A stretch of DNA of 64,000 nucleotides from Octopus bimaculoides (GCF_001194135.2 NC_068985.1:86101249-86165248); one strand, 5' to 3'. Numbered from the stretch's first letter, positions 605 through 64,000 are shown. Made by a program: numbers and translations. Notes: generated by a model not told the origin, from the sequence alone.

Positions 605-1090
605 TGAAGGAACATGGTACTGGTCTATGGCATGAAGCTAGCTTCAAACCACACCCACATTAAAACTCAGGGTCCTGAAGAGTGCCATAAGTAGAGCTCT
701 TCCACCTGAGTGAATGATTAATTAGAAAAGGTAAGGTAAGAATGAGGGTGATCATCATTGTCATCATCATGGCAATGATGATGATGATGATGACAGTGAT
801 GATGACGGTGATTATGAAAGAGATGATGATGATGATGATGATGATGCTTTCATAACCCGCAGCCATAAAACATTCACCAATCACCAAAAATTCTATCTGC
901 AGCAAAGAAACTACAAAACCTGTTATGAAGTGGAAGCCATTTACCATTATTTGTCATCTCCTCTGAAGAATATCAGTGATAGATGCATGGAAATTGAAAG
1001 AATGGTGGGGGTGGGGAAGGNNNNNNNNNNGTGATAATGGATATCTACAGTCATCGCCTTATAAATTATTTGACTGGCACAAGTTTACTG

Positions 1091-4283: not shown

Positions 4284-4491
4284 NNNNNNNNNNNNNNNNN
4301 NNNNNNNNNNNNNNNNNNNNNNNNNNNNNNNNNNNNNNNNNNNNNNNNNNNNNNNNNNNNNNNNNNNNNNNNNNNNNNNNNNNNNNNNNNNNNNNNNNNN
4401 NNNNNNNNNNNNNNNNNNNNNNNNNNNNNNNNNNNNNNNNNNNNNNNNNNNNNNNNNNNNNNNNNNNNNNNNNNNNNNNNNNNNNNNNNNN

Positions 4492-7999: not shown

Positions 8000-8325
8000 C
8001 TCACCTGTTTTTGTTCCTTTCTCATACTTTCACCTCTCATCAAATGGTATAAAGCTACTTCCCTTGAGGCTGTTCCATGCTCAGTTGAGCGATCTTTGCT
8101 TTACAAATCACTTAATTATCTCACTAGTGCTGGTATCATGTAAAAAGCACCGAGTACACTCTGTCAAGTGGTAGGCATATTAGGAAGGGCATCCAGCTGT
8201 AGAAACCACACCAAAGTAAACAGTGGAGCTTGGTGCAGTCCTCTGGCTTTTGTTAGCTTTGGTCACATCGTCCAACCCAAGCCAGAATGGAAGATGGACA
8301 TTCAATGGTGATGATGATGATGATA
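8000..8325 (+). mobile_element. RTE LINE 3' end
   Basis: TTAGGAAGGGCATCCAGCTGTAGAAAC core and (TGA)n tail. Confidence 0.85.
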
Positions 8326-8544
8326 AATATTAGTTATTAAAGTGGTTACTAACATACTTAATGAAATGAACTAAAAAATATTTATTAATTAAAATTAACC
8401 CCATAGTGATATGAACATAATGTCTTTCTACCCTCTCTCCCTCTCTTCCTCTCTCTCTCAATATATATATACACAGAGAGAGTGCGTGAGACAGACACAG
8501 AAATAAAGAGTATGTATATATAAATATATATATATATATATCAT

Positions 8545-10489: not shown

Positions 10490-10725
10490 ACTCAGTTGAG
10501 GGCTCTTCTTTGTCATGTGGGTTGTTTGGTAACCTCACTAGTGCTGGTGCTATGTAAAAAGTATTCAGTATGCTCTGTAAAGTGGTTGGCATTAAGAAGG
10601 GCATCCAGCCGTAGGAACCATGCCAAAGGCGACGCAGGAGCACAAGGCAGTCCTCCACATCATTAGAATCTATCCAACACATGCTTGCATGGAAGATGGA
10701 TGTTAAATGATGATGATGATGACAA
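10490..10725 (+). mobile_element. RTE LINE 3' end
   Basis: CACTAGTGCTGGTGC...AAGAAGGGCATCCAGCCGTAG...GATGGATGTTAAATGATGATG. Confidence 0.85.
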
Positions 10726-12272
10726 CAGCTACGGCTTTTTCACCACTGAGGTAATATCAGATCAGATCAGGTGAAGGGATGAGGTCAGGTGATAACAGGC
10801 CAGGAGAATCTATTAAATATATGAGAAAGTGGATAAATGGAATCATATTATATATAAATATTCTGGACCAAACATTTTCATGATTTTTGGTTAAAAATGA
10901 AACAATATGGAAAGTCAAGCAGTGCAAAAGTTTGGTTTCAAATAAGAGATATTCTGATTCTTGATGCTTTACATCAAAATCAACAATGCACTTTGTTGCC
11001 ATCATTTGGTTTCTTTTTCGAATAATAACCAAAAATATTCTCCTGAAGTTTCCCATATATATTTTATTTATTTACTTATCTTTTTGTTACACTTTGTTAT
11101 TGAAGTTGACTTCTTTTCTTTCATTTTTGTCAAAAAGAAATCTTCCATTAGGATTCAGGATGATGAAATAAAGAAAGGTGAACCGTGCAGTCTTTTAATT
11201 GTCAGTTTATACTTTATAGAGATTCCATTATTCCATTATTATTATTATTAGTTTCTTTATTTAAAACAACAACAACAAAATAAGAGAAACAGAATAAAAG
11301 AAATGATTAATTGTTAGAAGAGATGATAATTGTTAAGAAGAAAGATTCCTTTTCATTGCTGTCTTTTTTTTATTCTTGTTTTTTTCTAATTTTTTTGCTT
11401 GTTTTGGTGTGGATGGCATCGTTGGAAAGGGGTATGGGTGGGTGATATTGCATCATTCTTGTTTTTTTAGTTCTTTTTATTTTTTTCATTCTTCCCATAG
11501 AAAATAGATTGTCAAAAATGTTTGAAATAATGAAAAAAATAAGGAAAAGAAACTGAAATAACAGCAGCAAAAGGAATCTCATTGTTGTAGTTTATATTCA
11601 TGTTAAGGGAGAATTTCTATACTTTTTATATTGCCTTTTCCAGTCTCCCGTACTTTTACACACACACACACACTGACACATGCACAAAACTCATAAATAC
11701 GTATATATATTTATATATATACATACATATACATATACATATATATATACATATACATACATANNNNNNNNNNNNNNNNNNNNNNNNNNNNNNNNNNNNN
11801 NNNNNNNNNNNNNNNNNNNNNNNNNNNNNNNNNNNNNNNNNNNNNNNNNNNNNNNNNNNNNNNNNNNNNNNNNNNNNNNNNNNNNNNNNNNNNNNNNNNN
11901 NNNNNNNNNNNNNNNNNNNNNNNNNNNNNNNNNNNNNNNNNNNNNNNNNNNNNNNNNNNNNNNNNNNNNNNNNNNNNNNNNNNNNNNNNNNNNNNNNNNN
12001 NNNNNNNNNNNNNNNNNNNNNNNNNNNNNNNNNNNNNNNNNNNNNNNNNNNNNNNNNNNNNNNNNNNNNNNNNNNNNNNNNNNNNNNNNNNNNNNNNNNN
12101 NNNNNNNNNNNNNNNNNNNNNNNNNNNNNNNNNNNNNNNNNNNNNNNNNNNNNNNNNNNNNNNNNNNNNNNNNNNNNNNNNNNNNNNNNNNNNNNNNNNN
12201 NNNNNNNNNNNNNNNNNNNATATATGTATGTATATATACACACATACATACATACATATGTGTATGTGTGTG

Positions 12273-12809: not shown

Positions 12810-13192
12810 TTTTACTTGCTTCAGTCATTTTGACTGTGTCCATGCTGGAGCACTGCCTTAAAAGGTTTTGTTTTTTTAGTCAGACAAATCAACCCCAGGA
12901 CTTATTTCTTAAACCTGCTACTTATTCTATCAGTCTCTTTGGCTGAACCACTAAGTTACAGGGCCATAAACACACCAGGACCAGTTGTCAAACACAGACA
13001 AACACAGGCACAAAGATACACACATAGATTTATACATGCATATGACAAAATTCTTTCAGATTCTGTCTCCCAACTTAGCCACAAAGCTTTGGTTGGCCCA
13101 GGGCTATTGTAGAAAACACTTGCCCAAGGTGCCACACAGTGGGACTGAACTTGGAACCATGTGGCTAGGAAGCTTTACCACAGCCACACCTG

Positions 13193-13588: not shown

Positions 13589-14194
13589 CACACTCATACA
13601 TATACACACACACATATATATACATATACATCACCACCACCACCACCACCACCATCATCACCATTTAGTGCCCAACTCCCATCCCAACATAAAAGATGGA
13701 CATTAAATGATGTTGTGCATATGTGTGTGTATATATATATGCATATAAATANNNNNNNNNNNNNNNNNNNNNNNNNNNNNNNNNNNNNNNNNNNNNNNNN
13801 NNNNNNNNNNNNNNNNNNNNNNNNNNNNNNNNNNNNNNNNNNNNNNNNNNNNNNNNNNNNNNNNNNNNNNNNNNNNNNNNNNNNNNNNNNNNNNNNNNNN
13901 NNNNNNNNNNNNNNNNNNNNNNNNNNNNNNNNNNNNNNNNNNNNNNNNNNNNNNNNNNNNNNNNNNNNNNNNNNNNNNNNNNNNNNNNNNNNNNNNNNNN
14001 NNNNNNNNNNNNNNNNNNNNNNNNNNNNNNNNNNNNNNNNNNNNNNNNNNNNNNNNNNNNNNNNNNNNNNNNNNNNNNNNNNNNNNNNNNNNNNNNNNNN
14101 NNNNNNNNNNNTATTAACCCCAAGAAAAATAAAAATATTTGTATAATTAAAACAAAAACTAAAATTGTTTCAAAATCAATGAAACTAAATAAAA

Positions 14195-14451: not shown

Positions 14452-14565
14452 NNNNNNNNNNNNNNNNNNNNNNNNNNNNNNNNNNNNNNNNNNNNNNNNN
14501 NNNNNNNNNNNNNNNNNNNNNNNNNNNNNNNNNNNNNNNNNNNNNNNATATATATATATATACAC

Positions 14566-16559: not shown

Positions 16560-16895
16560 TGATTCAGTCAACTCAGGTGGCAGGTGAAAATACATTTGAG
16601 CGAGGTCGTTGCCAGTGCTGCTGGACTGGCTCCTGTGCAGGTGGCATGTAAAATACACCATTTTGAGCATGGCCGTTGCCAGTACTGCCTGACTGGCCAA
16701 CGTGCTGGTGGCACGTAAAAGCACCAACTACACTCTCGGTGTGGTTGGTGTTAGGAAGTGCATCCAGCTGTAGAAACTCTGCCAAATCAGATTGGAGCCT
16801 GGTGTAGCCATCCAGTTCACCAGTCTCCAGTCAAATTGTCCAACCCATGCTAGCATGGAAGGCGGATGTTAAACAATGATGATGATGATGATATA
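16560..16895 (+). mobile_element. RTE LINE 3' end with an internal tandem duplication
   Basis: Two GTTGCCAGT...GGTGGCA(T/C)GTAAAA units, then TTAGGAAGTGCATCCAGCTGTAGAAACTCTGCC and a (GAT)n tail into (TA)n. Confidence 0.9.
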
Positions 16896-17499
16896 TATAN
16901 NNNNNNNNNNNNNNNNNNNNNNNNNNNNNNNNNNNNNNNNNNNNNNNNNNNNATATATATATCATACACACATACAAAATTAAAAAAGATAAAAATTTTA
17001 ATTTCAGTTTTGTTAATTTATTTCTTTTTAATATTTGTTATTAATTTTACTGAAACTGTTTGATAAAGTCCATAATGTCACAGTTATAAACAAAATTAAA
17101 TTAAAACCCAAACAGAATAAAGTCTAAACAAACAATAAAAATTAAAGAAATGCAAACAACTACAGAGGAAAACTCTGTGACTGTGACAAATTGTTGTTGT
17201 TGTTGTTAAGCTGTTTAGCCCTAGGACAACGTGGTTGAGTAGACTATGATCAAAGGTACTGTAATTATATCTTGCTTTTTTTTTTCAGGCATTGTATATC
17301 TGAAACTAAATTATCAAATATGTCCATCCCTTTTATTGTACAGTAGGTTGTGAGATGAGGAAGATTTAACTGTTGTTTGTAGCACAATAAAACACCAGGT
17401 AGAAAAAAACCCAACAAAGATGGAAAAAAACAGAAAACCCCACAGGAAACTGTAAACTTAGGGAACATGTAATAAAAGTGACTCACAAGAAGATTAGAA

Positions 17500-22420: not shown

Positions 22421-22452
22421 NNNNNNNNNNNNNNNNNNNNNNNNNNNNNNNN

Positions 22453-23211: not shown

Positions 23212-23376
23212 AGCGTAGGAGTGGCTGTGTGGTAAGTAGCTTGCTTAGGAACCATGTAGTTCCAGGTTCAGTCCCATTGCGTGGCACCTTGGGCAAGTGT
23301 CTTCTACAATAGCCTCAGACCAACCAAAGCCTTGTGAGTGGATTTGGTAGACGGAAACTGAAAGAAGCCCGTCGTA

Positions 23377-23407
<31 letters not shown>

Positions 23408-23634
23408 NNNNNNNNNNNNNNNATGTGTGTGTGTACATGTTTGTGTGTCTGTGTTTATACCCCCAACATCGCTTGACAACCGATGCTGGTGTGTTTACGT
23501 CCCTGTAACTTAGCGGTTCGGCAAAAAATACTGATAGAATAAGTACTAGGCTTATAAAAAATAAGTCCTGGGGGCGATTTGCTTGACTAAAGGCGGTGCT
23601 CCGGCATAGCCACAGTCAAATGACACAAACTAAA
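23212..23634 (+). mobile_element. Full-length, well-preserved SINE family B
   Basis: A-box TGGCTGTGTGG (23222-23232), B-box GGTTCAGTCC (23265-23274), CCTTGGGCAAGTG CORE-like segment, internal (TA)/(TG) array, tail ending GGCGGTGCTCCGGCATAGCCACAGTCAAATGAC. Many CpGs retained. Confidence 0.9.
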
Positions 23635-27789: not shown

Positions 27790-27992
27790 TTCCATTGGGT
27801 TGGTATTAGGAAGGACATCTGGCCATAGGAACTCAGACAAAAATGAAACACACAAGTGGGATGTGGTTTTTGATCCAGTCCTACTGAGCAGTGGCCTCTG
27901 AAACGAACATTTTATCTCTGACTGTCACAACTCATCAAACCCATACCAGCATAAGAAGTAGAGGTAGACCAATGATGATGATGATGATGTAT
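27790..27992 (+). mobile_element. RTE 3' end
   Basis: GTATTAGGAAGGACATCTGGCCATAG core and (GAT)n tail. Confidence 0.7.
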
Positions 27993-30030: not shown

Positions 30031-30344
30031 ATACAAGGAACAATAAAAAGGATAATAGACAGGGAAGAAAGTTTGACAAATTAGGTTCAAACACTTCGAA
30101 TGGAAAGTGAAAGTAAATTAATATTTCATATATTTGTCTTTCATCACTAGAAAGAAAGAGAGAGAGAGGAGGAAAGAGAGGAGAGAGGGAGAGGGAGGAG
30201 AGAGATAAAAGAAAGAGAGAAGAGGTGAAGGTTAGAGGGGAATGGTACTGTATGTGAGGGGGAGTTATAAAGGAAGGAATCCATGGGAACTTCTATATAA
30301 TAATGACCTTTAACCATGTGGTCAGGAAACAAACTTCTTACCAC

Positions 30345-30615
30345 ATGAGAATCAGCTGAAAAGTTCCTCGGCTGATCAAGATACTCTCATAGGATGTGAC
30401 CAGATGTGATTTATTTTTCAACATGGTCCTCCTTGTGGTCCACACACTTTTCCCATCAATGTGCAGAGCTTGGATCCCATAAGTGAAGAAGCTTTCACCC
30501 TGTTGGTCAAAAAATTCATCAACAGCAGATATGACATCACCATCATCACTGTGATACTGGTACCCAGCCAAGTGTTTGACCATGTTGGGGAACAGCTTTT
30601 AGTCAGATAATAGTC
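30345..30615 (-). mobile_element. Mariner transposase 3' end with TIR remnant
   Basis: DYYL...PNMVKHLAGYQYHSDDGDVISAVDEFFDQQGESFFTYGIQAL...KSVW matches the mariner C-terminus DYHLFPNMKKxLAGxxY...GIQAL.HRWKKCV. Ends CAGCCGAGGAACTTTTCAGCTGATTC. Confidence 0.85.
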
Positions 30616-30967: not shown

Positions 30968-31814
30968 CTGTAATGGTGAAACGTGCATAGGAACTATTAT
31001 ATAAACTCGTGTTTATCCTCATTTCTCCTACATTTGCTCTGTAGCTCATAACTGGTAATACTACTCAGTGTAGAAGTTATCTTTAATTATTTAAAGAACT
31101 CTACATGAAGCAGACTCGATTATGAGACTCTGCATTGAGATCTAGACATTAACAGTAGCAGTTGTACATCTATTCATACAATTAGTTTCTACTGTATATA
31201 CATATATACATATACATATCTTATATTGTATTATATATATATATGTATGCATGTATGTATGCACGTATGTATGTGCCAAAATATACAGAAAACAGAAGCA
31301 CCCACTTTCAAATAGAAGGTTCTCAATGCATGATGTTTGTAGAGTGAGAAAGGGCTTCATTTGATAAAAATCAACATTTCCAAGATGATTTTGTTGGGTT
31401 TTTTATGCTCTTCAGAATGTCAAGTCAGAATGAAATAACGATGAAATGTAAGTGAAGTTAATTAAAATTGTTTTGAAAATCAAAGTGAAATCAAAATAAA
31501 ACACTGCTACTGGTCAGAAAGATCAATAACAAGTTAGCATTGATGGATTTACAATTGTTAATAATGGTGACAGTGGAAAACTGTTTGTTGGGGGGAGGGG
31601 AGAGCAAACGAAGAGCATGAAATGCTTTATGAATGGAATAACAGAAACAATAATTTGAAAATGCATCAGCTGATGGATGCACACACACACAGATATAAGC
31701 CACTATTAGCAGTGTACAAAAGCGAAAATCTTTGTAAGAGAAAATCTTTACTATTTCAGTTGAAATAGTAAAGATCATTCCAAACTGTTGAAATGGGATT
31801 TTGCAGACAAAACA

Positions 31815-31925
31815 GAAATCCCTTCAGGTAGACAGCCCTGCTTGATCTGTAGAAAAGTCGTTAGTAGAAATTTCATAAGATGTACCCAGTGTAAGCTATG
31901 GATACATGAGAGGTGCAGTAACTAT
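31815..31925 (+). mobile_element. RTE ORF cysteine-rich (PHD-like) segment remnant
   Basis: SGRQPCLICRKVVSRNFIRCTQCKLWIHERCS matches the RTE motif GKxPCxxCRKGVGxNSIxCxxCxxWxHKRCS. Confidence 0.7.
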
Positions 31926-34624
31926 ATTTTGTAGTTGAAAAATAAGAAAAATTAGAGCCATGTTTTCCCTCTTTCACACTCTCTCTATATTCTGTCTTAA
32001 TTTAAATCACATTCATTTTTTTTAATTGAAGATTTTAATGACTTATGTTTAATTTTGTCATTGATTTAGTGATATTGGATTATGAATCTATATAGAATTT
32101 AGAAATGCTCCAACTGGCCTCAATGATGAAGTGCCAAACTACTGTTTAGAGAATCACACAAATAATGAGTAAGTTTGAGAAGCAAAGAGGAGACAAATAA
32201 ACAAATAGAATGTGGAGTCAGACAAGCAGAATCCTGTGCTGGGAAATGTATAGAAATACAAAGAGACAAATGCAACAATCAAAGAAGTGTACATGGAAGA
32301 TAAACACACCAAAGGAAGACACAGTAGAGAGTCTATGTTTTTGGTGGATATTCTTCATCAAAAGAGAAGGAAACGAACTGAGAGACAAGAGAAAGAGAAA
32401 AAAATGTACAATACTGAATATAAAATATCTGTTTAAATATGTGTAGATCAGTAAAGTAGACTGGGCTAACATGAAATGAAAAACCTTACTCAAAGACCCA
32501 GCATCTCGTTCAGTCTAGAATTTAAACTTACAACCTTTAGATGCTGAGCTGAACACTCTAACTACTAGGACACACATTTTCATAGGCAGTATTTTTTCAG
32601 TAGAAATAAGTTGTTGGAAGATTTCATTAGAATCTGACATATGCCTTCAAGTGAGTGGTTATCTCCCTTTAATCTGATGCTGTTAAAAAAGCTCACTTCA
32701 TGGCTCAAGTTGTACATTTTGTAGAGCAACTCACAGCTTTTGCCTGACATAAGAACATTGCTGTTTCTTGTTTCTCTCTAAAAATATAGGGTTCTGTGTA
32801 CAGAGCTAAAACTAAAAGTCATTCATTAATATCAAAATGTAATGTTGTTGATTTCAAACTGTTGAAAGCTGGAGTTCAAATTTTACCTGATCACATTCTT
32901 GAAAAATCTGTGAATGTGAATGATTTATCAGAAACGAAATTGTAATAAATATTTACTTAATGAACCCAGCAACAGAGAAGTCAGAGGTTATGAAAAAACA
33001 AAACTAAACAAAGCAAAACATCCACACAAAGCCACGACTTCAAACTCTTTAAACTACACAGCTGTTTTATCACAAATTACCAGGGGGACATAAATCAGAG
33101 CTAAAAATTGATAATATAGAGTCCCATGAAAGGAATAACCATATTTTTTTCATTATTACAAATAACGTTTATTGTGATCATGCTGCTGCTGCTGCTGATG
33201 GTGATGATGGTGATGATGGTGATGATGGTGATGTTAATATTGATATGATTTGTGTGATAAAATTAATTTGCTATATGTTTATATCTTTATTCCTATTTCA
33301 GTTACAGTCTAAAATTGTGCACCAACAGTGTCCTATTTATGCAGTGTTGTTTTTTAACTTTATTTTTAGATTTTTATTTACTTATTTATTTTTGTTTGTT
33401 TGTTTTGTAATTTTTATCTGATATGCTTCAAATATAGAAAAAGAAATGTTAAATATTGTACAGGAGGGAACTGAAAAATTCAAATATTTCCTTATCAACT
33501 ATATCTTCCTTCTTCACTGATATTACAATTAATTTCTTTTCCAATGCAACAATTTTGTTTACAGATTCTTCGCCAATTCCACTCCGTGAATTGATTTTGT
33601 TTTACATTTAGGCGAGTTCACCTTGCTTTCTGTTTTCTTGTTCTTAATTTTATTGTTTGTTCTTTTATTTAAAAAGAAAAAATGTATTTTGTACTTATAC
33701 ACTTTTCTGCACGCAATAACCTTATCAGTTAACACAGTTTCTTTTATTTCATTTTGGGTTTATATTATTATTATTATTATTATTATTATTATCATCATTT
33801 ATTTATTTATTTATTTATCATTTACCTTTTGGATATTTCTGAGAGAAAGAAGAAAATACATAAATACTTTAAAATCAAAATGAAAATGAAAAGTTCTGTA
33901 AAAAAAAAAATCTCTGGAGATGAGTCAAAACTTTGAGTACAGAGTGGACTCTGAGGAATAAATTTTTTTCTTCAATATTTTATCTTAATACTTCCATCAA
34001 ATAACAGTTCTTGAAGAAAGAAGGCAGAAAAAAAAATCCAGCATGCTTTATTTTCTGAATACATATTCTATATTGGCAAAGAAAATATTGAGGTGTTATT
34101 TTTCTCTTAAAGTTTATTAGGAAAAAAAAAAAAATGAACAAATGTTCTCTTCGTTGTAGAGAAATGTTGGTATCAATTAAAATTTTCTAACACAGGTATT
34201 ATTCAAAAATTTTAAATCTGACAAACATCACAGATAATAACTTAATGAAAAATTCTATTAGATTTAAAAAGAAAAAGAAAAACTTTAATTTGATGCATGG
34301 CTAAAAATAATAGGAAGCTTATCTGCATCTAAAAGAATTCTTGAAGAGGAACCACTGTGTTTCGTGTCTTCTGTAATGAATGATAGTCACTCTATCATTA
34401 AATCTGAGAGTAATTAATATAAGACTAATGAAGAACAATGCAACAATAGTGAAGACAGATTGGGTTTAGGGAGTTCTTCTGAATTAGTTGCACCCATATT
34501 TCTGATTCTGGAAGGGATTTTTGTTTTTGTTGAAAGTTTCATTATTTGCAGACTGTTGGAGTTATTATCGTCTCAACTGGATATCATCATCATCATCATC
34601 GTCATCAACATCGTCAGCAGCAGC

Positions 34625-36051: not shown

Positions 36052-37189
36052 TACAAGATGTTCAGGTTAAAATATTTTATGTCTCTTTTGTTCAGAAACA
36101 GTTTGATGTATTGGTGAATAGTCAATGGTGTTGGAGAGCATAAAGATTAAAGTTGCAGCCAAGAAAAAGTTAGCTGACTTGGAGAACTGGAAGCCATCTG
36201 AATATTGGAAAAGAGTCACCTGTATCATTATGGTTCACACTATGTATCGAAATGCTGACATGACTGCTGCTCAATGTTCTGTTCATGCTGTAAAGTCTGT
36301 AAGACATAACATGCACAGTTGCAACAGAGACTACACAGCAGTTGCCTGAAGGAAGGGATACAGCAAACGTTGTGAGGGTGATGTCATGCTGCCTGACATC
36401 TTTGAATAGGGTGTTAGGCTCTGTTAAGATATATGAACCTGCTGGAGACTGTGGTCAAACCCTGGCTGGAGTGGGTTGCTGTTCGAAGGCCGTAAGTGTG
36501 GCAGCAGGATGTGACTCTTTGCCATACGTTCAGAAAGAGTCAGAAGTGGTTGTTGGAGAATTTCTATGACTTCACCAGCCTTCATTTCTGGTCTCTCAAT
36601 TCCTCTGATTCTAATCCTATGGATTTCGATGCATGGATACATTTGAGAAAGACACCAACTGCTCTTCCTATTCAACCAAGGCTGAGCTGGTAGCCAAGAT
36701 GAAGAAAGTGTCTGAAGATCTTCTCAAAGGACACAGTGAGGACTGCATGCATCAGATTCTGGAGCCATCTTGAGGTTTTGATGGTAGCCGAGGGGGGTTA
36801 TTTTCAGTAAAATGCTATCACTCTGCCATAATTTCATTGATTTAAAAAAACAATACTTTTACATTTGGATGGAATATTGTGTTTACTTTTCCTTTTATGG
36901 CATTAGGAAGGGCATCCAGCCATAAAACTATGCTAAAACGACCGTGATGGTGGTCTGTAAAAAGCACTCAGTAATGTGGTTGGTGTTAAGAGGGGCATCC
37001 AGTGGTAAAAGTTGTATCAAAACAGAGCTTGGTGCAGTTCCTTACCTCCAGTCACACCATATCTAACCCATGCCAGCATGGAAGATGGGCATTAAATGGT
37101 GATGATGATGATAATGATATATGCTTATACATGTTTTTATTTATATAAATATAAACATATATGTATCCATATATTTCAACCATCTTATA
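36052..37189 (+). mobile_element. Internally deleted DD37D (maT-family) Tc1/mariner element with both TIRs
   Basis: WQQD-(37 aa)-D in QQDVTLCHTFRKSQKWLLENFYDFTSLHFWSLNSSDSNPMD. The N-terminal segment WKPSEYWKR...RKGYSKRCE is joined directly to GDVMLPDIFE. TIRs TACAAGATGTTCAGGTTAAAATAT (36052-36075) and ATATTTCAACCATCTTATA (37171-37189). Confidence 0.88.
36898..37118 (+). mobile_element. RTE 3' end nested inside the maT element
   Basis: Two AGGAAGGGCATCCAG-type cores and a (GAT)n tail between the transposase stop and the right TIR. Confidence 0.85.
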
Positions 37190-40100: not shown

Positions 40101-41869
40101 ATGCAGCCTACAAGATGAAAATCTCTTTGACTGAGTGGGTCTACTGTAGGGAGAAATATTGCTTTATGCTATGGGATGAAGGGTCCAAAACAGAATAGGT
40201 TTCTTGCTGTAGGGGAGCTACACAACTCCTGATAGACCTCTGTTCTCGATATTTTAATAAGTTCACTTTATATTTTAATATATTTAAATGGGTCACTAAT
40301 TTGCTCTTAAATGTCTGAAATTTTGTATAGAGGAACATCTTCTAGATGAAAAGGTCGTGAAGAATGTAACTTTTTCTGACAGCTCCAATAAACCCTGGAC
40401 AAGACTGCATATCACAACCACCACCACCAACACTATCACCATCATCACCATTGCTGTAACTCTCCCTCTCTCCAGGCCTTGGCAATCCTTTACCTCCATG
40501 CCCTCCTGACCACACAAAACTGATGCTAGTTTCTGTTCAGTAACAAAGGGTTGGCAGAATCAATAAAACTTCAAACAAAATACCTTGTAGTATTTATTTA
40601 AATTCCATTTTTATTCAAAGGATGACATTGCCTTTCATCTTTATGGGTTCAATGAAACAAACTACCAGTCATATGCTTGGGTTCATTCAATTGATTACAC
40701 ATGCAGAACATTTCTGGCCTTGAGTCTTCGTTCAATTATCTGTTACTTCGTTTTATAATCATATTTAGTATTTCATCTAATTAAGTATTAAACTTCATCA
40801 GCTCAGATAAAGGGTTTATTTTAATCTCAATATTGGTTTAAAATTTCAGTTAAATACTTTATACCAGAAATGAAATGATTTGAGCTGAGTGGGTGGTGCT
40901 AGATTCCCTTGTTCGTCGTATAGCCAGCTGGAGATGATGTCTCCTGGGGCTAATTTACAGCAACATTCATCCTAAAGTAGGACTGCCATGTTATCGTGGC
41001 AAAAATCTTTACTATTATAATAATATTCAGATTTTGCTTTGTGTCTCTATGAGCTGAGTTCAAATCTCACCCAGAGACTGCAAGGGACAGCAAGTTATAA
41101 GTTCAAGCAAACATTATGATAGGATGGCTGGTTACTTTGTTAAAACCTTAAACCCAGAGATTAAGTGGTCTACTGTTTCTATCCCATCGTTGCAGTATCG
41201 GCACTTTGGGTCTACACCATTTTTCATCACATTGTCTTGATAGTTCAGAGTCAATAAGCTCCGAACAGCCAAAATAAAGCCGTCACTTTCTGCCTTTGGC
41301 CCTGAGCTCCATAGCCAGTGATGGGTGCACTTCTAGTATACATCAGCTGCTCAAGAGGCCACACAATGGGACTGAACCTGGAACCATGTGGTTGGGAAGC
41401 AAACTTGTTACTACACAGCTGTGCCTGTGTTTACAAACCTGCTCTGAATTTTAAAACAGTTTCCATGAATATCTAAGTACATGTGTATGTGTGTGTGCGA
41501 TTGTATATTTAGGTAGATGAGACAGAGATTGTGTGTATGGATATTTGATGTCTAGTCAGACACTGGTGAGAATTCTATAAAATATATAAAAATGTGTAGC
41601 CTTAAGTCAGACATAAACACTTTAATCTTTATTATAGATGGAAGGAATTTAGGATAAATACCTTTAATTAAAAGCAAAAAAAAAAATAAAAGATCTAATT
41701 AAGGTGGTGAAACATTAGAGTTATTACAATGTTGTATAATTTGATGATAATATTGATGTATTTGATGATAATATTGAGGTTCATTGGGTACAAACAACAA
41801 ACACCATTGACTACGGAAGCAGACAATTTGATAGTCTGTTGATGTGATTAAAGTGTTTTTATTTGGTAC

Positions 41870-42470: not shown

Positions 42471-44287
42471 CACACACACACAACAAACACACATAAACAC
42501 ATACACAAACACAAAGCATGCACACACACACACATAAATATTTTTGGATCCTCATAAACATTTCCCTCATAATCTTGTATCAAATTCTATGGGTCAATAA
42601 AATTAGAATCAGTCAAGTCCTGCGGTCAATGTAAATTACTAGCCACCCCTGCCCTGCCCCCCAAATTTCAAGCTTTGGGTCTTTAGCAGAAAGGATTATT
42701 ACTTTTATTATTATCAAGATCGTCATCCTCTCAGTTTCCTTAAGGCTTATCTTCTTAATTTTAATTTTGCTGAATATAAATTGAAGAACACTCTTTGGTG
42801 TTTATTTAACAATTATTTTTTATTTACTGATTTATTTGTCCCTTACATTCACACACACACACACACACAGACACGTTTATAATCATGAATGTCAGGTCTC
42901 ACTCTTCAGTGCTACTGGTTACATATGATGCAGTACATCCAGTTGCATGGTTAGACTGTTGGGGACCGAACAGGCAATGGCACCAAGCATGCTTAAAGAC
43001 TGGTAGTTTCTGAAGACTCGGTAGGATGAAAAATAAAACCTGTTAAAGAGCAGAAGAACTGAGAATTGTAAACAGCCATCTAATTGCATGATATATATTT
43101 GTATGTTTTAAGGCATAAAAATTTCTGATCTGATACCCTGGTATGCATTTAGCCCAAAAGGGTGCGTTTGACTCTATGGGAAAAGCACCTAATCCAGATG
43201 ATGGAGAACTCTAAAAGAAAAGCCAAAATTATGTTGTTCATAGAATTTATGGCAAACAGTGGCACCAAGTTTCTGCTATCAACATTTCTAAAAAGTGTGG
43301 TTGGTCCAGCACAAACCTTCACCACTGAAAACAAATCATCTGTGTGGGGGGTCTGATGGCTTATGGCTATTGGACCCACATACATCAAAACCAATGGGAG
43401 AATCCACTATATGTATGTATGTGTGTGTGTGTGTATTATATTTGTCCAAAATATATGATTAGCTACTTTCTATGAAGTTTAGCCATATGTATATAGTTTG
43501 GACAGCATAAATTAGTAGTAGTAGTAGTAGTATTAGCAGTAGTGGTGGTGGTTGTGGCAGAAACCCTTTGTATCAATAATACTATTTGGCAAACAGTCTA
43601 TAAATGCGTGCACAATGCAAAGCTATTTTGGCAAATGTTTGTCAGTCGAGGTAAGCCTTAAAAATGAATTAACCAGCGAGAAAAAGCTAGGGAGGAACAC
43701 AATTGTGGACATAAATCTAATCCATTTTAACAAAGTGTACGCAATGCAAAAAGATATATAAACCATGAATTGCTCAACGAGTGAAGGATTTTTATGACAC
43801 CTACGATCTATCCTTTGTGTTGGCACAGAACTGATTGGCAGTATAAAAACATCATCTGTGCTCCAAGCTGTTTGGTCATGCGAATAATTTTAAGCAAATA
43901 TCTAATGATACTGAGAGACAGAGAGAGTCAGAGGAAAGGAGAGAAAGAGGGAGAGAGAGAGAGAGAGATAAACGAAGTTCTATTTATTTTGCTAAAGCAA
44001 TAGGATTAAACATTCTCCATTGGACGATATAGTCTGAGTCGTAATGCTACAAAAATACCTGAACTGTTTGTTACTCTATTTAATATTTGCTGCAGAACAC
44101 CCATAATCATACATTCACAGCTTTTGTGTTTAGTAACAGGGAGATATTTTTTGAAGCATTTTTTCAAGCCCCTTTGAGGGAGAGCGAAAAAAAAAATCAT
44201 TGAACTAGGCATAAAAATAAATGGTAAATTGCATAATCAAATTGTTCTTTGTTTTCGTTATAGTTTTTTTTACTTTAAAAATATTTA

Positions 44288-44290
<3 letters not shown>

Positions 44291-44362
<72 letters not shown>
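44291..44362. repeat. (AT)n microsatellite
   Basis: Directly visible. Confidence 0.95.
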
Positions 44363-44367
<5 letters not shown>

Positions 44368-44915
44368 TATGCATATATACACAACAAGCAATGTGGCTTA
44401 TAAAATACTAATAATTTTTCTACTTAGCATGAATGTGAGCTGGTTGTACTGGAAATGCTAGAGTTATAAAACATCAAAATGCAGCCACTTCATAGAATAT
44501 CTAACAGTGTTCTTTTTTTTTTTTAATCTTCAAACCAAAAATAGTTAAGTGCTTAAAAAAGTATAACAACAACAACAACATAAGAGGTGCATCAGAATTA
44601 TAAGATAAAGACTTTTTTCAAAATGAATTCTTTTTCCTAAAAATGATGGAATGCTGAAAAGCTACCTAATTAAATTTCTAATATTGAAAATAGTTTAAAT
44701 TTGAATATCAAGAAGAATTTTAATATAATAGGCTTAATTGTAAAATAGAAGGAAATCAGTTAACAAGCAATATGACATCAATTTCCATGAAATAATTTTA
44801 GGAGAAATATCCCTGTGGATAGAGAAGAGCATTTTGCTGTTAAAGAGTCATAGGAACTTGGTGCTTATACTACAAAGATGCCTGTGAATTTTCTCCAACA
44901 TACCATAAGGAAGTG

Positions 44916-44960
44916 TTTTTCTTTTTTCTTTCTTTCTTTCTCTTTTGCCTTCAGGTAAGT
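44916..44960 (+). promoter_or_regulatory. Candidate recursive splice site (3'SS directly abutting a 5'SS)
   Basis: A 37-nt pyrimidine tract (44916-44952, one G) is followed by AG|GTAAGT, with the junction at 44954/44955. Confidence 0.45.
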
Positions 44961-47520
44961 GAATGAGTGTCAAGAGAAAACAGGCTTTTAAGCAGAGCTA
45001 CTGTGAGCTTTAATCAGAATCAGCAGAAAGTTGAGTGCGGGGGAAAATTATTTGCTTCCAATCAAACACAGAATCCTGGGAGATATAAAAGTTATAATTG
45101 AAAATATTCTCAACCATTCTGGTTATCGGGTGCATCAGTTACTAATTAGAAGAAAATTTCAACAATATGCTACCATAATTTTCACAAAAGCTGGATTTAA
45201 AGATCATGACTTGACAATAGTCTTCATATGTGTGTGGGAATTAATCGAATACAACACTGGCATATCTTCTTCACAATCTTCTTTCTTTACAAGTAGTTGA
45301 TGATGGAGATTTCCCTCTCTCATTATCTCCCATTCTTTCTTTCTTTTTTCCCTTCCATCTTCAAGAAACTATAGAAATAGTTGCCTAAGTATTAATAGTA
45401 ATATAGGTCAGCATCATTATCTCTAATTACTCTCAGAGAAAATCACAGCAGTTTTGTCCATACTGGAGCCTTGTTACAAATACCATTAAATCTTAATATA
45501 ATTACTGAATTAGTGAAGAAAAAAAATAACATATTTCTTCAATAATTATAACAACAATAATAATAATAATAATGACGATGATGATGATGATGATGATAAC
45601 AATAGCAACAACAACAACAACATATTTATTTTTACCTGCAGGAATGATAAATAGAGCAATACATCTAACAATTTTATTTAAATTTAGATATCCATACATA
45701 ATCACTGATATCATTCCAATGGGAAATACACTTACTGACTACTGGAGGGGAAAAAATAGCATTGCAATCATACCTTTCCCAGGTAAATTAGTGAATTAAA
45801 TGAAGTAAGAATTCCATATAAAATTTATAAATTGTAATGGTAAATAAACATGGAATGATGGCAATTAAGAAGACAAGAATGGCTCTCTGGTTAAAAAGTT
45901 TGTTTTGTGAGTGAGTGTTTCTGGTTGTTGAGCAAACACTGTCGTTTTCTATCGCATCATACTGATCAATACGTTGTGTATAGAATTTGGCAGACAGAAA
46001 ATGTCTATATATGGACATCACATGACCATACACCAGCAAAGTCTTCTCTCTTGCACACTACATTCGTTTCCTCTTATGTTCTGCTTTTCTCTCGGCTTAT
46101 TTATATTCAATCATTCATGTACACAAGTATTAAACATCAAGTGGAACAGGCTTGATCCAATTCTCTGTGTTTGTGTTTATATATGCAAACACAGAAAGAG
46201 AGAGAGAGAGAATGAGGACTCTTTCATTCTTGGAGGGGACAAAGGGCAATTTCACAAACACTAGTTGAAGACGTGACAAGCCCTTAAGTACTGATACCAC
46301 CATAAGAAGCATCCAATCATCTCAGAAGTGATTTGAAGTAAGAAGGACATGCAGCTATAGAAACCACACCAAAATGGAAAATATGAATGAAGTGTGTCCC
46401 CCTAGGAGAATAGCAACTGTAAACAACATCAGTTTAACAAGAAGTTTGTATCATTTAACCAGGGATGGTCTCAGGTGGAGTGGCATCAGAATGATGAATT
46501 GGTTTTGTGTGGAGAAAGGGGATGTACCCATAGTTGTGTGACATCTCCACCTTGATGCTAGGATTACTGAGATTGAAGTGATTGATGTTCTGTTTAACGA
46601 AATAAAAGTTAATGGCTGCAAGGGGGTGGGGGTCAACATTGTTGTGTGGAGGAAGGACTGGTCAAGTCAGTAGGTGTGAAGATGTTTCCTTCACAGCAAA
46701 GTAGAACATTGGACCATTTTGGTATATTCACTGGTGAATTGTTTTCAAAATATTTTCTAAGATAACAAGTGACACATGATGTCTGAAATAGAAAGGCCAC
46801 AAGCATTCTTACAAAGCTCCAAGACAAAACTGGAGACATTAATTTTCAAAAAACAAAAAAAACAAAATAAAGAATGGAGATGTAAAAAAAGATAAATAAA
46901 AAAAAAATGGTGCGAAGAAAATGTCTTGATTCAATCTCGATTTAATATATGAAACTTGAAGGTTTTGGAGATATTTTGGGAATTCAAATTTTTGTTCTTT
47001 TGTTTTCTTTTTGTATTCATTGTCCTTCTTAGCAAACAGATAGCAAAAAAAAAAGAAGAAAAACAAGAGAAATGACAGGAAGAAGAAAAAGATTGAATAA
47101 ATGAATGTATGTAAAATCATGGAGACACAGACACACAGTTTGGTATATCCACTCAAATATGTGTGTATGTGTGTATATATATATACATATATTTACACAC
47201 ACACNNNNNNNNNNNNNNNNNNNNNNNNNNNNNNNNNNNNNNNNNNNNNNNNNNNNNNNNNNNNNNNNNNNNNNNNNNNNNNNNNNNNNNNNNNNNNNNN
47301 NNNNNNNNNNNNNNNNNNNNNNNNNNNNNNNNNNNNNNNNNNNNNNNNNNNNNNNNNNNNNNNNNNNNNNNNNNNNNNNNNNNNNNNNNNNNNNNNNNNN
47401 NNNNNNNNNNNNNNNNNNNNNNNNNNNNNNNNNNNNNNNNNNNNNNNNNNNNNNNNNNNNNNNNNNNNNNNNNNNNNNNNNNNNNNNNNNNNNNNNNNNN
47501 NNNNNNNNNNNNNNNNNNNN

Positions 47521-48589: not shown

Positions 48590-48835
48590 TTGTGCCATGT
48601 GAAAAGCAATGGCACTCATGACATGAAAAATCACTCATGCTGGTGCCACATAAAAAGCATCCAGTACACTCTGTAAATTGGCTGAAATAAGGAAGGGCAT
48701 CCTGCTGTAGAAATCATAGCAAACAGATAATGGAGCCTGGTGCAGCTCTATGGCTTGCCATCTCCTATCAAACCATCCAACCCATGCCAACATGGATAAT
48801 GGACGTTACATGACGATGATGATGATGACAATGAA
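48590..48835 (+). mobile_element. RTE 3' end
   Basis: AGGAAGGGCATCCTGCTGTAGAAA core, GGACGTTACATGACGATGATG tail. Confidence 0.85.
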
Positions 48836-48877
48836 GTGTCATACAATTAGTGTCCTTCACTTTCAGTCACCATTGTT

Positions 48878-50686: not shown

Positions 50687-50725
<39 letters not shown>

Positions 50726-50884
50726 ACAGACTTCTTTCAGTTTCCGTCTACCAAATCCACTCACAAGGCTTTGGTTGGCCCAAGGCTATAATAGAAGGCA
50801 CTTGCCCAAGGTGCCACAAAGTGGGACTGAACCCAGAACCAAGTGGTAGGGAAGCAAGCTTCTTACCACACAGCCACTCCTGCA

Positions 50885-50887
<3 letters not shown>
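50508..50887 (-). mobile_element. Full-length SINE family B
   Basis: Tail (CAGTCATTTTGACTGTGGCCATGCTGGAGCACTGCC), internal (TA)n, head to CACACAGCCACTCCTGCAC. Confidence 0.9.
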
Positions 50888-50919
<32 letters not shown>

Positions 50920-50922
<3 letters not shown>

Positions 50923-51085
50923 AGCAAGATGGGCTTCTTTCAGTTTCCATTTCCCACATCCTATGGCAAGGTTTTGGTTGGCCCAATATTATAGTAGAAA
51001 ACACTTGCCCAAGGCACCACACAGTGGGTCTGACCTCAGAACCATGCAGTTGGGAAGCAAGCTTCTTACCACACAGCCACATCTG
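50920..51085 (-). mobile_element. Second tandem SINE-B head
   Basis: Repeats 50722-50887 after a (TA)n spacer. Confidence 0.85.
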
Positions 51086-52521: not shown

Positions 52522-53470
52522 ATACACCTTACAGTTTGATGTCTCTTCTCTCTGAACTACCTCTAAACTTTTGTAATATATTTACTGACAGATGAAAGAT
52601 GTCAAAATAAGAAGTTAACAAGAAACTATTAAAGAATAAATAAAAATCAATAAATATATTTCAAACATTATTGATTGCCCACCTGCAGTTTTCTTTTACC
52701 TATTCTTTAAAACTTGTAGCTTAAAAATATGCTCCACCTTTTGTGAATATAATTTTGATCAGGTATGGCTGTATCACCAAAAAGAGTTTTTAGTCTATTT
52801 TAAGATTATATAAATTGCCTGGTGCTGCCGCTGGGTTTCCAGACCTCAGTCAAACCGCCCAATCCATGCCAGCATGAAAAACGGACGTTCAACAATGATG
52901 ATGATGATAAAGGAAGTGATATTTTAATGAACTGATGTTTTATGAGCAACTTTGAAATTTTTGCCTTAGAAACTGGGGTTAAAATTACCGAAACTCAGTG
53001 AAGAAATTGTTAAAATTTTGAGAGTAAAATGAAACAATTTGAAAATTTTGGCAACTCAGCTTTGAGAAGTTTTTAAGTTGTTTTAAGAAGAATTCAAGCC
53101 AAACACAAACAATGTGACAAATCTTCATTTGTGTAAATGATTGAATTCATAAAACTTCTTGGAATTACTTGGCCACATGTGGTGAGTGAGCAGATCTCTT
53201 GTGTATACATTGTATGTATGTGTGTGTGTGTGTTTATGTACTTCATTACTACCAATCCCATAATTCCCTAGCTTGTGAAAATATATGATACATGGAGCAG
53301 AGGTGGCAGCATTTATGATTCTTCAGTCACTCATTTGACTGTCCTCTGTGATTAATGTACTCTAAGAAGTACAGACATCAAAAAGATCGAAAAGGAGATG
53401 ATAATCAGTGAATCTGATGGTCAATGACCAGTAAGTAGCAAACATAGACATACATACAACACACACACAC

Positions 53471-54159: not shown

Positions 54160-54312
54160 TGGTAGTTCCCATCTACCAAATCCATTCACAAATCTTTGGT
54201 CGACCCTGAGGGTATGGTAGAAGACACATACCCAACGTGCCATGCAGCAAGACTGAACCTGGAACCATGTAGATGGGAAGCAAGATTCCTGTCATACAGC
54301 CATGCTTCGTGC
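54160..54312 (-). mobile_element. SINE family B head
   Basis: CTACCAAATCCATTCACAAATCTTTGGTCGACC...GACTGAACCTGGAACCATG. Confidence 0.75.
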
Positions 54313-58369: not shown

Positions 58370-59225
58370 CATGCCTCTCACCAATGCTTGGTGATGTGTT
58401 GTCTTAGCAATGTTTTTGGGGTCACAAGGCATTTTAGCTTTTTCAACATGAGACCCCTTATCCAGTCAACCCAGCTGGAATTGATCAAGTCCCAGCTTGC
58501 TTTCTCATAGCAGCCAACCACTGGTGGACCTGCTTTGTGCAAAGCTAGTTAATGGCCTTCTTTGCAACTCCAGCAACAAAATTTATGGCCCTCCTCTTTG
58601 TTGTGCCAGCAACTGCAAGCCTAGTCAGAGCTTTGCAGTCAGAAAGTCCCAGAAAAATCTCTCATCAGCTCCTTTCTACTGCCGCACAATCTGCCTGACA
58701 GCCTCAGTTTCTGCACTGCTCTACCAGTTCCCGGTATTTGTCAAACTTCTCATGAGCTTCCTCTATGTGTTCCTCCTCAGTTCCCACAAAGTCATTTATT
58801 TGGTGGCATTTGAGAAGATCTCTAAGAGCAGGTGGAGTAGTGTTGGTACAATGTATTCTAGGAAATTTAACTGTTCCACAAGATTCACTCTCAGTTGCCA
58901 GTCTGGGCCTGTGGAATGTTGAAATGAAAGTCATTGAAGCTTCAATGAAATGGGTATCTCTCTGACTCTGATAAAAGTGATGGCCCCTTTCCTGGGGTGG
59001 TATTTACTGGGTTGAATCACTGTCAATAGCACTTCAGCTACTTCCTTAAGCACCTGCTCATACCACAAGTAGTAGGGGCCATCAATTACAGCTCTGGTGC
59101 AGCTGCTGAGGAGATGTTGAAAGGATCTTCATTGCACAATGGACATGGTTGAGTTTCGATCCTGTCCCATGTGAAAGAGTTTACTAGACTTGGTAGAATG
59201 TTGTAGACACTTTGCCAAGAATCCA
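58370..59225 (-). mobile_element. HERO-type (restriction-like endonuclease) non-LTR retrotransposon, decayed 3' part
   Basis: In order across frameshifts: QSVYNILPS..TWDRIETQPCPLC, QHLLSSCTRAVIDG.Y.WYEQVLKEVAE (CCHC knuckle), KFP, EEHIEEAHEKFDKYRELVEQCRN, LCKAL...GTTKRRAI. This matches the HERO RLE architecture. The 3' UTR-like segment reads GCTGGGACTTGATCAATTCCAGCTGGG. Confidence 0.85.
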
Positions 59226-63083: not shown

Positions 63084-64000
63084 CATTTGCAAATAATATA
63101 TTATTTCCGAAACAAATTATAGCATGTCTATTGTTTGTCAAGTTAGAAGGTCAATAATAAGCACACAGCTTTGCCCATGTGAATATTACAAATTATTACA
63201 AGTTTTTTTTACAGGCAGGACAATAAAAAAACTCCAAAAGAATCAAAAGAATGTTGAGCATCCAGTTTATGAATCATGGTTCATTTCTTNNNNNNNNNNN
63301 NNNNNNNNNNNNNNNNNNNNNNNNNNNNNNNNNNNNNNNNNNNNNNNNNNNNNNNNNNNNNNNNNNNNNNNNNNNNNNNNNNNNNNNNNNNNNNNNNNNN
63401 NNNNNNNNNNNNNNNNNNNNNNNNNNNNNNNNNNNNNNNNNNNNNNNNTATATGATTCGCCATGCTGGACTGCTGAAAACTACAAGTTTATTTTCTTTTA
63501 TTCCTTTCTGTTGAAGAGCATAGGCTTGAAACGTAAAAGACTTTTTCATTTTCCCAAGTGTAAAACTAATACATTTGCTTGCTCTTCATACACCTCTCTT
63601 TGTTTTTTGTTTTTCTATAAATTTCGACTATATATACATATATATCTAAAATTATTAAATAGTGCAATACAGTAGTATTGCTTCCCAGTAAAACAAAGCA
63701 TCATCAGGTTAAAGTATAGGTAAGATGGTGTTACAACAATGCAGTGAAGCTTTATTATAGCATCGTTGCAGAAAATGTGCAAAAAAACTGACATTAATCC
63801 TCCAAATCAGTAAAAATTTGCAAGACATTCCAAAAATTCTCCAAATGAGATTCTTATGTGAACAGATATACACACTTGGGTGTATGCATCGACAAGTCAA
63901 GCAACACACCAACTCAACCACATATTTACAAACACTAGGAACTCTCTTACACAAAATGTCTTGTTGCTTTGTTAGTGACTGGCTTGAACTCTTTCAAAAA

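What the first reader, a model, noticed from the sequence alone, without database searches (positions are those of the whole stretch)
44916..45008. Textbook recursive-splice (ratchet) site with a stop-containing RS-exon
Seen: a 37-nt pyrimidine tract with no AG from 44914 to 44952, then CAG|GTAAGT, so a strong acceptor directly regenerates a perfect donor. A second donor (ACT|GTGAGC) lies 48 nt downstream, and the 44955-45002 segment has stops in all three frames. The site sits in a TE-poor island. Established: this AG|GT architecture defines recursive splice sites in long Drosophila introns and RS-exons in long vertebrate neuronal genes. Inference: this window may be part of a giant + strand intron removed stepwise. 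I am not aware of recursive splicing being characterised in cephalopods. Caveat: the tract is partly (TTTC)n, so it could instead be a normal donor of a pyrimidine-rich exon, or chance.
Basis: partly seen in the sequence, partly recalled or inferred. Interest (0 to 1): 0.72.

Follow-up and report, generated by a model that had tools for sequence, protein, structure and literature searches.

The report
Candidate recursive splice site, untested
A perfect back-to-back "end of intron / start of intron" signal sits alone in gene-free DNA, so it is a good candidate stepping stone for removing a giant intron in stages, but nothing here shows that the region is transcribed.

Summary
A 37-nt tract (36/37 pyrimidine, no AG) runs into CAG|GTAAGT at 44952-44960. 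A second donor, ACT|GTGAGC, lies 48 nt downstream.

The junction is a strong outlier. Of 333 AGGT sites on both strands it scores 15.8 bits; the next best scores 4.8. It is the joint-best donor and fourth-best acceptor in the window. I expect 0.002-0.008 sites this good per 64 kb by chance, which still means tens to hundreds in a Gb-sized genome.

The supporting details are weak. A downstream donor this good appears by chance 20% of the time, and two of the three stop codons come from GTAAGTGA itself.

All sequence-level criteria of a Drosophila-type ratchet point with a cryptic RS-exon are met. The three decisive criteria could not be tested: a sense-strand long intron, splicing intermediates and conservation. 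I found no coding exon, no homologue and no related DNA, and I did not confirm the organism.

Verdict: a credible but unproven ratchet point (about 0.4). The rivals are chance (about 0.3) and an ordinary boundary of an unannotated non-coding or first exon (about 0.2). If real, it is a new member of a known kind.

The parts
44897..44912 (+). Inferred branch-point region. These are the nearest adenosines upstream of the tract, and the best UnA match is catAAg with A at 44908.
   Evidence: There is no A between 44913 and 44952, so any branch point for the 44954 acceptor lies at least 42 nt upstream. The match to yUnAy is poor. This part is inference only.
44916..44952 (+). Polypyrimidine tract of the putative 3' splice site. 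It is partly a degenerate (TTTC)n array.
   Evidence: 36/37 pyrimidine with no AG. TRF period 4 and 7 arrays at 44916-44941. The acceptor half scores 11.1 bits, fourth best of about 7100 AG sites in the window.
44952..44960 (+). Ratchet-point core CAG|GTAAGT: the acceptor AG at 44953-44954 directly abuts a consensus donor.
   Evidence: The donor is the joint best of about 7100 GT sites (8.9 bits). The combined score is 15.8 bits against 4.8 for the next best AGGT. Chance expectation is 0.002-0.008 per window.
44955..45002 (+). Putative cryptic RS-exon, 48 nt, with stop codons in all three frames.
   Evidence: The length agrees with the roughly 50-nt cryptic RS-exons of Drosophila (PMC8605326). 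Two of the stops come from GTAAGTGA itself.
45003..45008 (+). Putative RS-exon donor ACT|GTGAGC, much weaker than the ratchet-point donor.
   Evidence: It scores 1.4 bits against 8.9 bits. It is the best GT within 150 nt downstream, but a site this good occurs by chance in 20% of 76-nt spans.

Best explanation
The site is a candidate intronic ratchet point (recursive splice site) with a cryptic RS-exon, on the + strand.

Proposed mechanism, all inferred:
1. If a + strand pre-mRNA runs through here, U2AF binds the 37-nt pyrimidine tract. The 48-nt segment 44955-45002 is recognised by exon definition with help from the weak donor at 45003.
2. The upstream exon is spliced to 44955. This removes the first part of the intron as a lariat.
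3. The new junction rebuilds a consensus donor (exon end|GTAAGT). That donor out-competes the weak GTGAGC donor.
4. The 48-nt segment and the rest of the intron are therefore removed in the next step, leaving no trace in the mRNA.
5. If the downstream donor were used instead, a stop-containing 48-nt exon would be included.

Shown here: only the sequence anatomy and its statistical rarity. Not shown: transcription, strand, intron membership and use of the site.
For: The tract, CAG|GTAAGT and the second donor are exactly as described. The junction is an extreme outlier at 15.8 against 4.8 bits. It is at once the joint-best donor and the fourth-best acceptor in 64 kb. Chance expectation is 0.002-0.008 per window.

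The published rules are met. Ratchet points are tandem acceptor|donor pairs with a short cryptic RS-exon of about 50 nt and a downstream donor, and the ratchet-point donor is generally the stronger of the two (PMC8605326). Here that is 48 nt, and 8.9 against 1.4 bits.

The setting fits a deep intron. There are no coding exons or protein homologues anywhere in the window, and only three weak splice-bounded open segments. No usable acceptor lies within 650 nt upstream, so this is not the end of an ordinary internal exon. The 1.1 kb around the site is single-copy in the window.

In every invertebrate tested by Shepard et al., such motifs are 4 to more than 20 times commoner on the sense strand of large introns than on the complement (PMC2773006). 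Most very long fly introns use them (PMC6110457).
Against: There is no evidence of transcription, of a + strand gene or of any exon. The window could equally be intergenic or lie in a - strand gene.

At 0.002-0.008 per 64 kb, a Gb-sized genome should hold tens to a few hundred equally good chance sites. The tract is partly a (TTTC)n-type array, of a kind that is common here: 25 pure pyrimidine runs of 20 nt or more across the two strands.

The RS-exon donor is weak and has a 20% chance expectation. No good branch-point match lies in the only place one could sit. Conservation could not be examined.

Vertebrates, whose introns are long and rich in repeats as this window is, show almost no sense-strand enrichment of the motif (ratio 0.9-1.5). 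My weight matrix uses generic metazoan frequencies from memory, not this organism's.
Confidence: 0.4

Rival explanations
1. Chance. A degenerate (TTTC)n-type pyrimidine run happens to be followed by AGGTAAGT in untranscribed DNA, or in DNA transcribed from the other strand, and has no splicing role.
For: Pyrimidine runs are abundant: 25 pure runs of 20 nt or more on the two strands, and TRF calls this one a microsatellite-like array. GTAAGT occurs 24 times in the window. A rate of 0.002-0.008 per 64 kb gives tens to hundreds of such sites in a Gb-sized genome, and a scan of many windows will surface them. The extra features add little. No sign of a gene was found.
Against: Within this window the coincidence is rare, at p about 0.002-0.008. 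The site is 11 bits above the next best AGGT. The full architecture, including a downstream donor, is about five times rarer still.
Confidence: 0.3
2. An ordinary 5' splice site. 44954 is the end of an unannotated first exon or non-coding exon (5' UTR or lncRNA) whose 3' part is pyrimidine-rich, and CAG|GTAAGT is simply its donor. One specific version is a first coding exon that starts at ATG 44878 and encodes a 25-residue hydrophobic, signal-peptide-like start (MPVNFLQHTIRKCFSFFFLSFSFAF).
For: CAG|GTAAGT is also the consensus for every normal donor. An ATG at 44878, with A at -3, is in frame up to the junction. TATAAAA motifs lie at 44399 and 44465.
Against: No acceptor better than -1.8 bits lies within 650 nt upstream, so an internal exon is unlikely. 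Open frames upstream are at most 111 nt, and most of the 'peptide' is just the translated TTTC-type tract. The region is 29% G+C with no promoter-like features beyond AT-rich words. No downstream coding exon or homologue was found.
Confidence: 0.13
3. An expressed 48-nt cassette or 'poison' exon (44955-45002). It would be used as a normal alternative exon of a + strand gene, and its first bases happen to read GTAAGT. Mechanistically this overlaps with the expressed RS-exons of vertebrates.
For: A strong acceptor is followed 48 nt later by a GTGAGC donor, and stops in all frames fit a non-coding or NMD-inducing exon. Mammalian genomes are reported to hold thousands of expressed exons that begin with a donor-like sequence (PMC8605326).
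Against: The exon's own donor is weak (1.4 bits) next to the 8.9-bit donor rebuilt at its 5' end, so competition should favour skipping (PMC8605326). There is no transcript evidence.
Confidence: 0.07

Closest known systems
Drosophila intronic ratchet points with cryptic RS-exons (Ubx, kuz, Bx; Hatton 1998, Burnette 2005, Duff 2015 and Joseph 2018, as summarised in PMC8605326 and PMC6110457)
   Same: A long T-rich tract is followed by CAG|GTAAGT. A short cryptic exon (48 nt here, about 50 nt in flies) follows, with a weaker downstream donor and stop codons. The site stands alone in DNA without exons.
   Different: For fly sites the long host intron, saw-tooth RNA coverage, junction and lariat reads and deep conservation have been demonstrated. 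None of these is known here. The organism is not an insect, and its genome is far richer in repeats and microsatellites.
Vertebrate recursive splice sites and RS-exons in long neuronal genes (Sibley 2015, as described in PMC5126111 and PMC8605326)
   Same: A YAG|GT junction, recognition by exon definition through a downstream donor, and an RS-exon carrying premature stops that is skipped when the rebuilt donor wins.
   Different: Only nine fully suppressed intronic sites were noted definitively in mammals. They lie in genes hundreds of kb long and were found from brain RNA-seq. Vertebrate large introns show almost no sense-strand excess of the motif (PMC2773006). Here neither the gene nor its expression is known.
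Computationally predicted RP-sites in large introns of other invertebrates (sea urchin, mosquito, bee, beetle; Shepard et al. 2009, PMC2773006)
   Same: The prediction comes from sequence alone, as a combined acceptor-donor consensus. Those predicted sites were likewise never validated one by one.
   Different: Those predictions rest on a genome-wide sense-versus-antisense enrichment inside annotated introns. This is a single site with no annotation and no enrichment test. No mollusc was included in that study.

Membership tests
Intronic ratchet point / recursive splice site (Drosophila type) | [quoted passage not shown] | tested here: met
   36/37 pyrimidine tract, CAG|GTAAGT. 15.8 bits, top of 333 AGGT sites. 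Definition from PMC6110457 and PMC8605326.
Intronic ratchet point / recursive splice site (Drosophila type) | Short cryptic RS-exon (about 50 nt) bounded by a downstream donor | tested here: met
   48 nt to ACT|GTGAGC. Caveat: a donor this weak is expected by chance in 20% of 76-nt spans.
Intronic ratchet point / recursive splice site (Drosophila type) | Ratchet-point donor stronger than the RS-exon donor, so the cryptic exon is skipped | tested here: met
   8.9 against 1.4 bits with a generic metazoan matrix. Rule from PMC8605326.
Intronic ratchet point / recursive splice site (Drosophila type) | Lies on the sense strand inside a very long intron | not testable with these tools
   No annotation was reachable. 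No exon or homologue was found on either strand in 64 kb. That fits a giant intron and intergenic DNA equally well. Strand skews are inconsistent.
Intronic ratchet point / recursive splice site (Drosophila type) | Splicing intermediates: junction reads into the site, lariats from it, saw-tooth nascent RNA coverage | not testable with these tools
Intronic ratchet point / recursive splice site (Drosophila type) | Acceptor|donor motif conserved well above its flanks | not testable with these tools
   An exact scan for the 25-nt core in metagenome contigs found nothing. A control with the window's own interspersed repeat also found nothing, so that collection holds no relatives. The other collections are prokaryotic or viral.
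Vertebrate RS-exon (Sibley type) | RS-exon carries premature stop codons or shifts the frame if included | tested here: met
   Stops in all three frames. The test is weak because GTAAGTGA itself supplies two of them.
Vertebrate RS-exon (Sibley type) | Host is a long, typically neuronal gene, and use of the site is seen in brain total RNA | not testable with these tools
   The host gene, if any, is unknown.
Ordinary internal exon ending in a normal donor | A usable acceptor upstream within exon range, and for a coding exon an open frame | tested here: not met
   The best acceptor within 650 nt upstream scores -1.8 bits, and open frames are at most 111 nt.
Interspersed repeat / transposable element carrying the motif | Further copies of the surrounding sequence | tested here: not met
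   44400-45500 has no other copy in the window beyond microsatellite-level matches. Genome-wide copy number could not be tested.

The most novel reading that the evidence does not exclude
This is a working ratchet point in a giant intron of a cephalopod gene. It would be the first recursive splice site described in a mollusc or any lophotrochozoan. That would show that stepwise removal of long introns through cryptic RS-exons is ancestral to bilaterians and persists in a repeat-rich genome with very long introns.
Probability: 0.35. Interest if true: 0.5.

Novelty: new member of a known kind. Interest (0 to 1): 0.35.

Why it matters
Recursive splicing has been shown directly in flies and vertebrates, and has been inferred from motif enrichment in a few other invertebrates. 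The searchable literature holds nothing on molluscs.

Cephalopods have very large genes and elaborate RNA processing in the nervous system. How they remove giant introns accurately is therefore a reasonable open question.

A validated site would extend a known mechanism to a new phylum. It would also give a concrete locus for RT-PCR, lariat mapping and antisense blocking. One unvalidated motif does not do that. Its main value is as a seed for a genome-wide sense-versus-antisense test, which would settle cheaply whether the mechanism is used in this lineage.

Tried and rejected
1. Finding the host gene through proteins. I searched the ORF next to the site. I then searched two concatenated sets of all clean stop-free segments, covering 37-58 kb and the rest of the window. 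None gave a hit.

2. Exhaustive HMMER of the ORF at 45010-45300 against 1.84 billion representatives. The only hit (E 4.7e-4) is a bacterial Listeria-Bacteroides repeat protein that shares the word VWELIEY in four repeats. I rejected it as spurious.

3. Pfam on ten ORF fragments, including a 141-nt open 'exon' at 45642-45782. Nothing reached a gathering score.

4. Rfam across the whole window gave no family. ARAGORN found no tRNA-like sequence.

5. Orthologous DNA. An exact scan of metagenome contigs for the core gave no hit, and the control repeat gave none either. This route is uninformative rather than negative.

6. Retroposon tail idea. The purine-rich minus strand could be an A-rich tail of a retrocopy. 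I rejected this because there is no AATAAA upstream on that strand and no other copy in the window.

7. Strand of transcription from composition. GC skew and TA skew change sign from bin to bin and point in no consistent direction.

8. Primary papers by Duff and by Sibley were not held. I used the secondary accounts in PMC8605326 and PMC5126111.

Full report
**Observation**

- The tract TTTTTCTTTTTTCTTTCTTTCTTTCTCTTTTGCCTTC (44916-44952) is 37 nt with 36 pyrimidines and one G at 44947.
- There is no AG from 44914 to 44952.
- CAG (44952-44954) abuts GTAAGT (44955-44960).
- ACT|GTGAGC lies at 45000-45002|45003-45008.
- The 48 nt between the two donors have stops in all three frames.

Tandem Repeats Finder calls 44916-44941 a degenerate period-4/period-7 array (TTTC / TTTTTCT).

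**Is it more than chance?**

AGGTAAGT occurs twice on the + strand and never on the - strand. Only this copy follows a pyrimidine tract.

I scored all 333 AGGT sites on both strands with a combined acceptor-plus-donor weight matrix. The frequencies are generic metazoan values from memory, not this organism's. This site scores 15.8 bits and the next best 4.8. It is the joint-best of about 7100 GT sites as a donor and the fourth-best of about 7100 AG sites as an acceptor.

The expected number of sites as good or better per 64 kb, both strands, comes out as follows:

| Method | Expected sites per window |
|---|---|
| The window's own acceptor and donor score distributions, treated as independent | 0.0018 |
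| Real upstream contexts with Markov models of order 3 to 1 for the next eight bases | 0.0022-0.0077 |

The junction is therefore a rare coincidence within the window. It is not rare genome-wide. If the genome is about 2.7 Gb (my recollection for Octopus bimaculoides; the organism is unverified), these rates give roughly 80-320 equally good chance sites.

The accessory features add little:
- The second donor scores 1.4 bits. One as good falls within a 76-nt span 20% of the time.
- GTAAGTGA itself creates the stops in two of the three frames.
- The 'TE-poor island' is a 4.5-kb stretch (42639-47156) without in-window repeats. Only 12% of the window is repeated in-window anyway.

**Surroundings**

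The window is 34% G+C and full of microsatellites. It is interrupted by 11 runs of N and carries several interspersed repeat families. This is typical of a draft assembly of a large animal genome. I could not verify the cephalopod origin.

The 1.1 kb around the site is single-copy within the window. Rfam and ARAGORN found nothing.

I looked hard for a host gene and found none:
- The ORF just downstream (45010-45300) has no homologue in the indexed protein collection.
- Against 1.84 billion representatives, that ORF gave only a spurious match to a bacterial repeat protein.
- Two concatenated queries of all clean stop-free segments, covering 37-58 kb and the rest of the window, gave no hit.
- Ten ORF fragments gave nothing above Pfam's thresholds. 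There were only faint transposon-type hints.
- Only three weak splice-bounded open segments exist in 64 kb.

The window therefore contains no detectable coding exon on either strand. This fits the inside of a giant intron and fits intergenic DNA equally well.

Strand composition does not decide the matter, because GC and TA skews change sign from bin to bin. One oddity is that GTAAGT is more frequent on + (19 against 5). Published counts show no sense-strand excess of donor motifs in large introns (PMC2773006), so I do not read this as evidence for the strand.

**Anatomy of the acceptor**

There is no adenosine between 44913 and 44952. A branch point would therefore have to sit at least 42 nt upstream of the AG, around 44897-44912. 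The match to yUnAy there is poor. A distal branch point behind a long tract is acceptable but is not 'textbook'.

No acceptor better than -1.8 bits lies within 650 nt upstream of 44954, and upstream open frames are at most 111 nt. This argues against 44954 being the end of an ordinary internal exon. A first exon is still possible, for example one starting at ATG 44878 and giving a 25-residue hydrophobic peptide that is mostly translated TTTC-type tract.

**Comparison with what is known**

Ratchet points are defined as tandem acceptor|donor pairs. In flies they have these properties (PMC8605326; PMC6110457):
- They lie mainly in long introns.
- Their motif is ultraconserved.
- They include a cryptic RS-exon of about 50 nt with a downstream donor.
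- The ratchet-point donor is usually stronger than that downstream donor.
- The RS-exon content is poorly conserved and disruptive if included.
- 63% of fly introns longer than 40 kb have at least one high-confidence site.

The vertebrate model is the same in outline. However, only nine fully suppressed intronic sites were noted definitively.

Shepard et al. counted combined motifs in introns longer than 50 kb (PMC2773006):

| Group | Motifs per 100 kb, sense strand | Motifs per 100 kb, complementary strand | Sense/complement ratio |
|---|---|---|---|
| Sea urchin, fly, mosquito, bee, beetle | 0.48-2.2 | about 0-0.12 | 4 to more than 20 |
| Vertebrates | 0.08-0.14 | 0.07-0.12 | 0.9-1.5 |

No mollusc was included. 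I found no paper that links recursive splicing with octopus, cephalopods, squid or molluscs beyond incidental mentions.

**Membership**

Here the sequence-level criteria are met: the motif, a 48-nt cryptic exon, and donor strengths of 8.9 against 1.4 bits. The criteria that actually establish a recursive site could not be tested with these tools:
- location in a sense-strand long intron;
- splicing intermediates and saw-tooth coverage;
- conservation.

A DNA scan for the core in metagenome contigs found nothing. A control with the window's own repeat also found nothing. That absence therefore says nothing about conservation.

**Weighing**

The posterior depends mostly on something unknown: whether this lineage uses recursive splicing as widely as the tested invertebrates or as sparingly as vertebrates.
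- If real sites of this quality number in the hundreds, they outnumber the tens of chance sites that show the full architecture. The probability would then be well above one half.
- If real sites number only a handful, chance dominates.

The genome resembles vertebrates in repeat load and intron size, but the tested invertebrates all show enrichment. I therefore put the ratchet-point reading at about 0.4, pure chance at about 0.3, an ordinary donor of an unannotated first or non-coding exon at about 0.13, and an expressed 48-nt exon at about 0.07. The remainder is unassigned.

**Verdict**

If real, it is a new member of a known kind in a phylum where the mechanism has not been described. That is of moderate interest.

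The decisive steps are cheap with the right data: place the window on an annotated assembly, look for junction, lariat and saw-tooth signals in stranded total RNA, check orthologous loci, and run a genome-wide sense-versus-antisense motif count.

Noticed in passing
whole window, e.g. 12452, 16270, 44955 (+) against 57132, 45735 (-): The donor hexamer GTAAGT is strand-asymmetric: 19 copies on + against 5 on -. The binomial p is 0.0066, uncorrected, with about 16 motifs inspected. All copies sit in different contexts, so the excess does not come from one repeat family. AATAAA shows the opposite, non-significant trend (81 against 101). I have no explanation for this.
   Followed up: partly
window 13080-13173, 41307-41400, 50762-50855, 50965-51058, 54188-54281: An interspersed SINE-like repeat family of about 140 nt has five copies with 78% mean column identity. 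ARAGORN finds no tRNA-like head. Two copies lie in tandem at 50691-51085, and an inverted copy lies at 23217-23407.
   Followed up: partly
window 8252-8356, 10654-10758, 16820-16889, 27916-27985, 37043-37147, 48757-48861, 52839-52943: A second interspersed repeat family has seven copies. Each ends in a (GAT)n/(ATG)n microsatellite, with core TCCAACCCATGCCAGCATGGAAGATGGACGTTAAATGATGATGATGAT.
   Followed up: no
window 45642-45782 (+): A 141-nt stop-free segment is bounded by an acceptor-like ...tttttacctgcag| and by cccag|gtaaat, which is a second, weak AG|GT junction (3.6 bits). It lies 690 nt downstream of the finding. Pfam gave no match, and it did not pass my exon-candidate thresholds.
   Followed up: partly
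window 3-230 (+), 30341-30598 (-), 31764-31931 (+), 41135-41332 (-), 58707-59128 (-): These are decayed ORF fragments that look transposon-derived. By eye they are mariner-like (HTH and C-terminal parts). Sub-threshold Pfam hints are zf-RVT (E 0.003), C1/PHD (E 2e-5) and HTH. None reaches a gathering score, and none found a homologue in the concatenated protein searches.
   Followed up: partly
window 1021-1030, 1949-1958, 4284-4491, 11764-12219, 13752-14111, 14452-14547, 16900-16952, 22421-22452, 23408-23422, 47205-47520, 63290-63448: There are eleven runs of N, totalling 1715 bases. Most are flanked by dinucleotide microsatellites. These are assembly gaps of a draft genome, so distances across them are unreliable. 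The nearest to the finding is 2.2 kb downstream.
   Followed up: no
window 45010-45300 (+): A 96-codon stop-free segment starts 7 nt after the putative RS-exon donor. Its only database match (E 4.7e-4) is a bacterial Listeria-Bacteroides repeat protein that shares the word VWELIEY. I judged it a chance match, so the segment is probably non-coding.
   Followed up: yes
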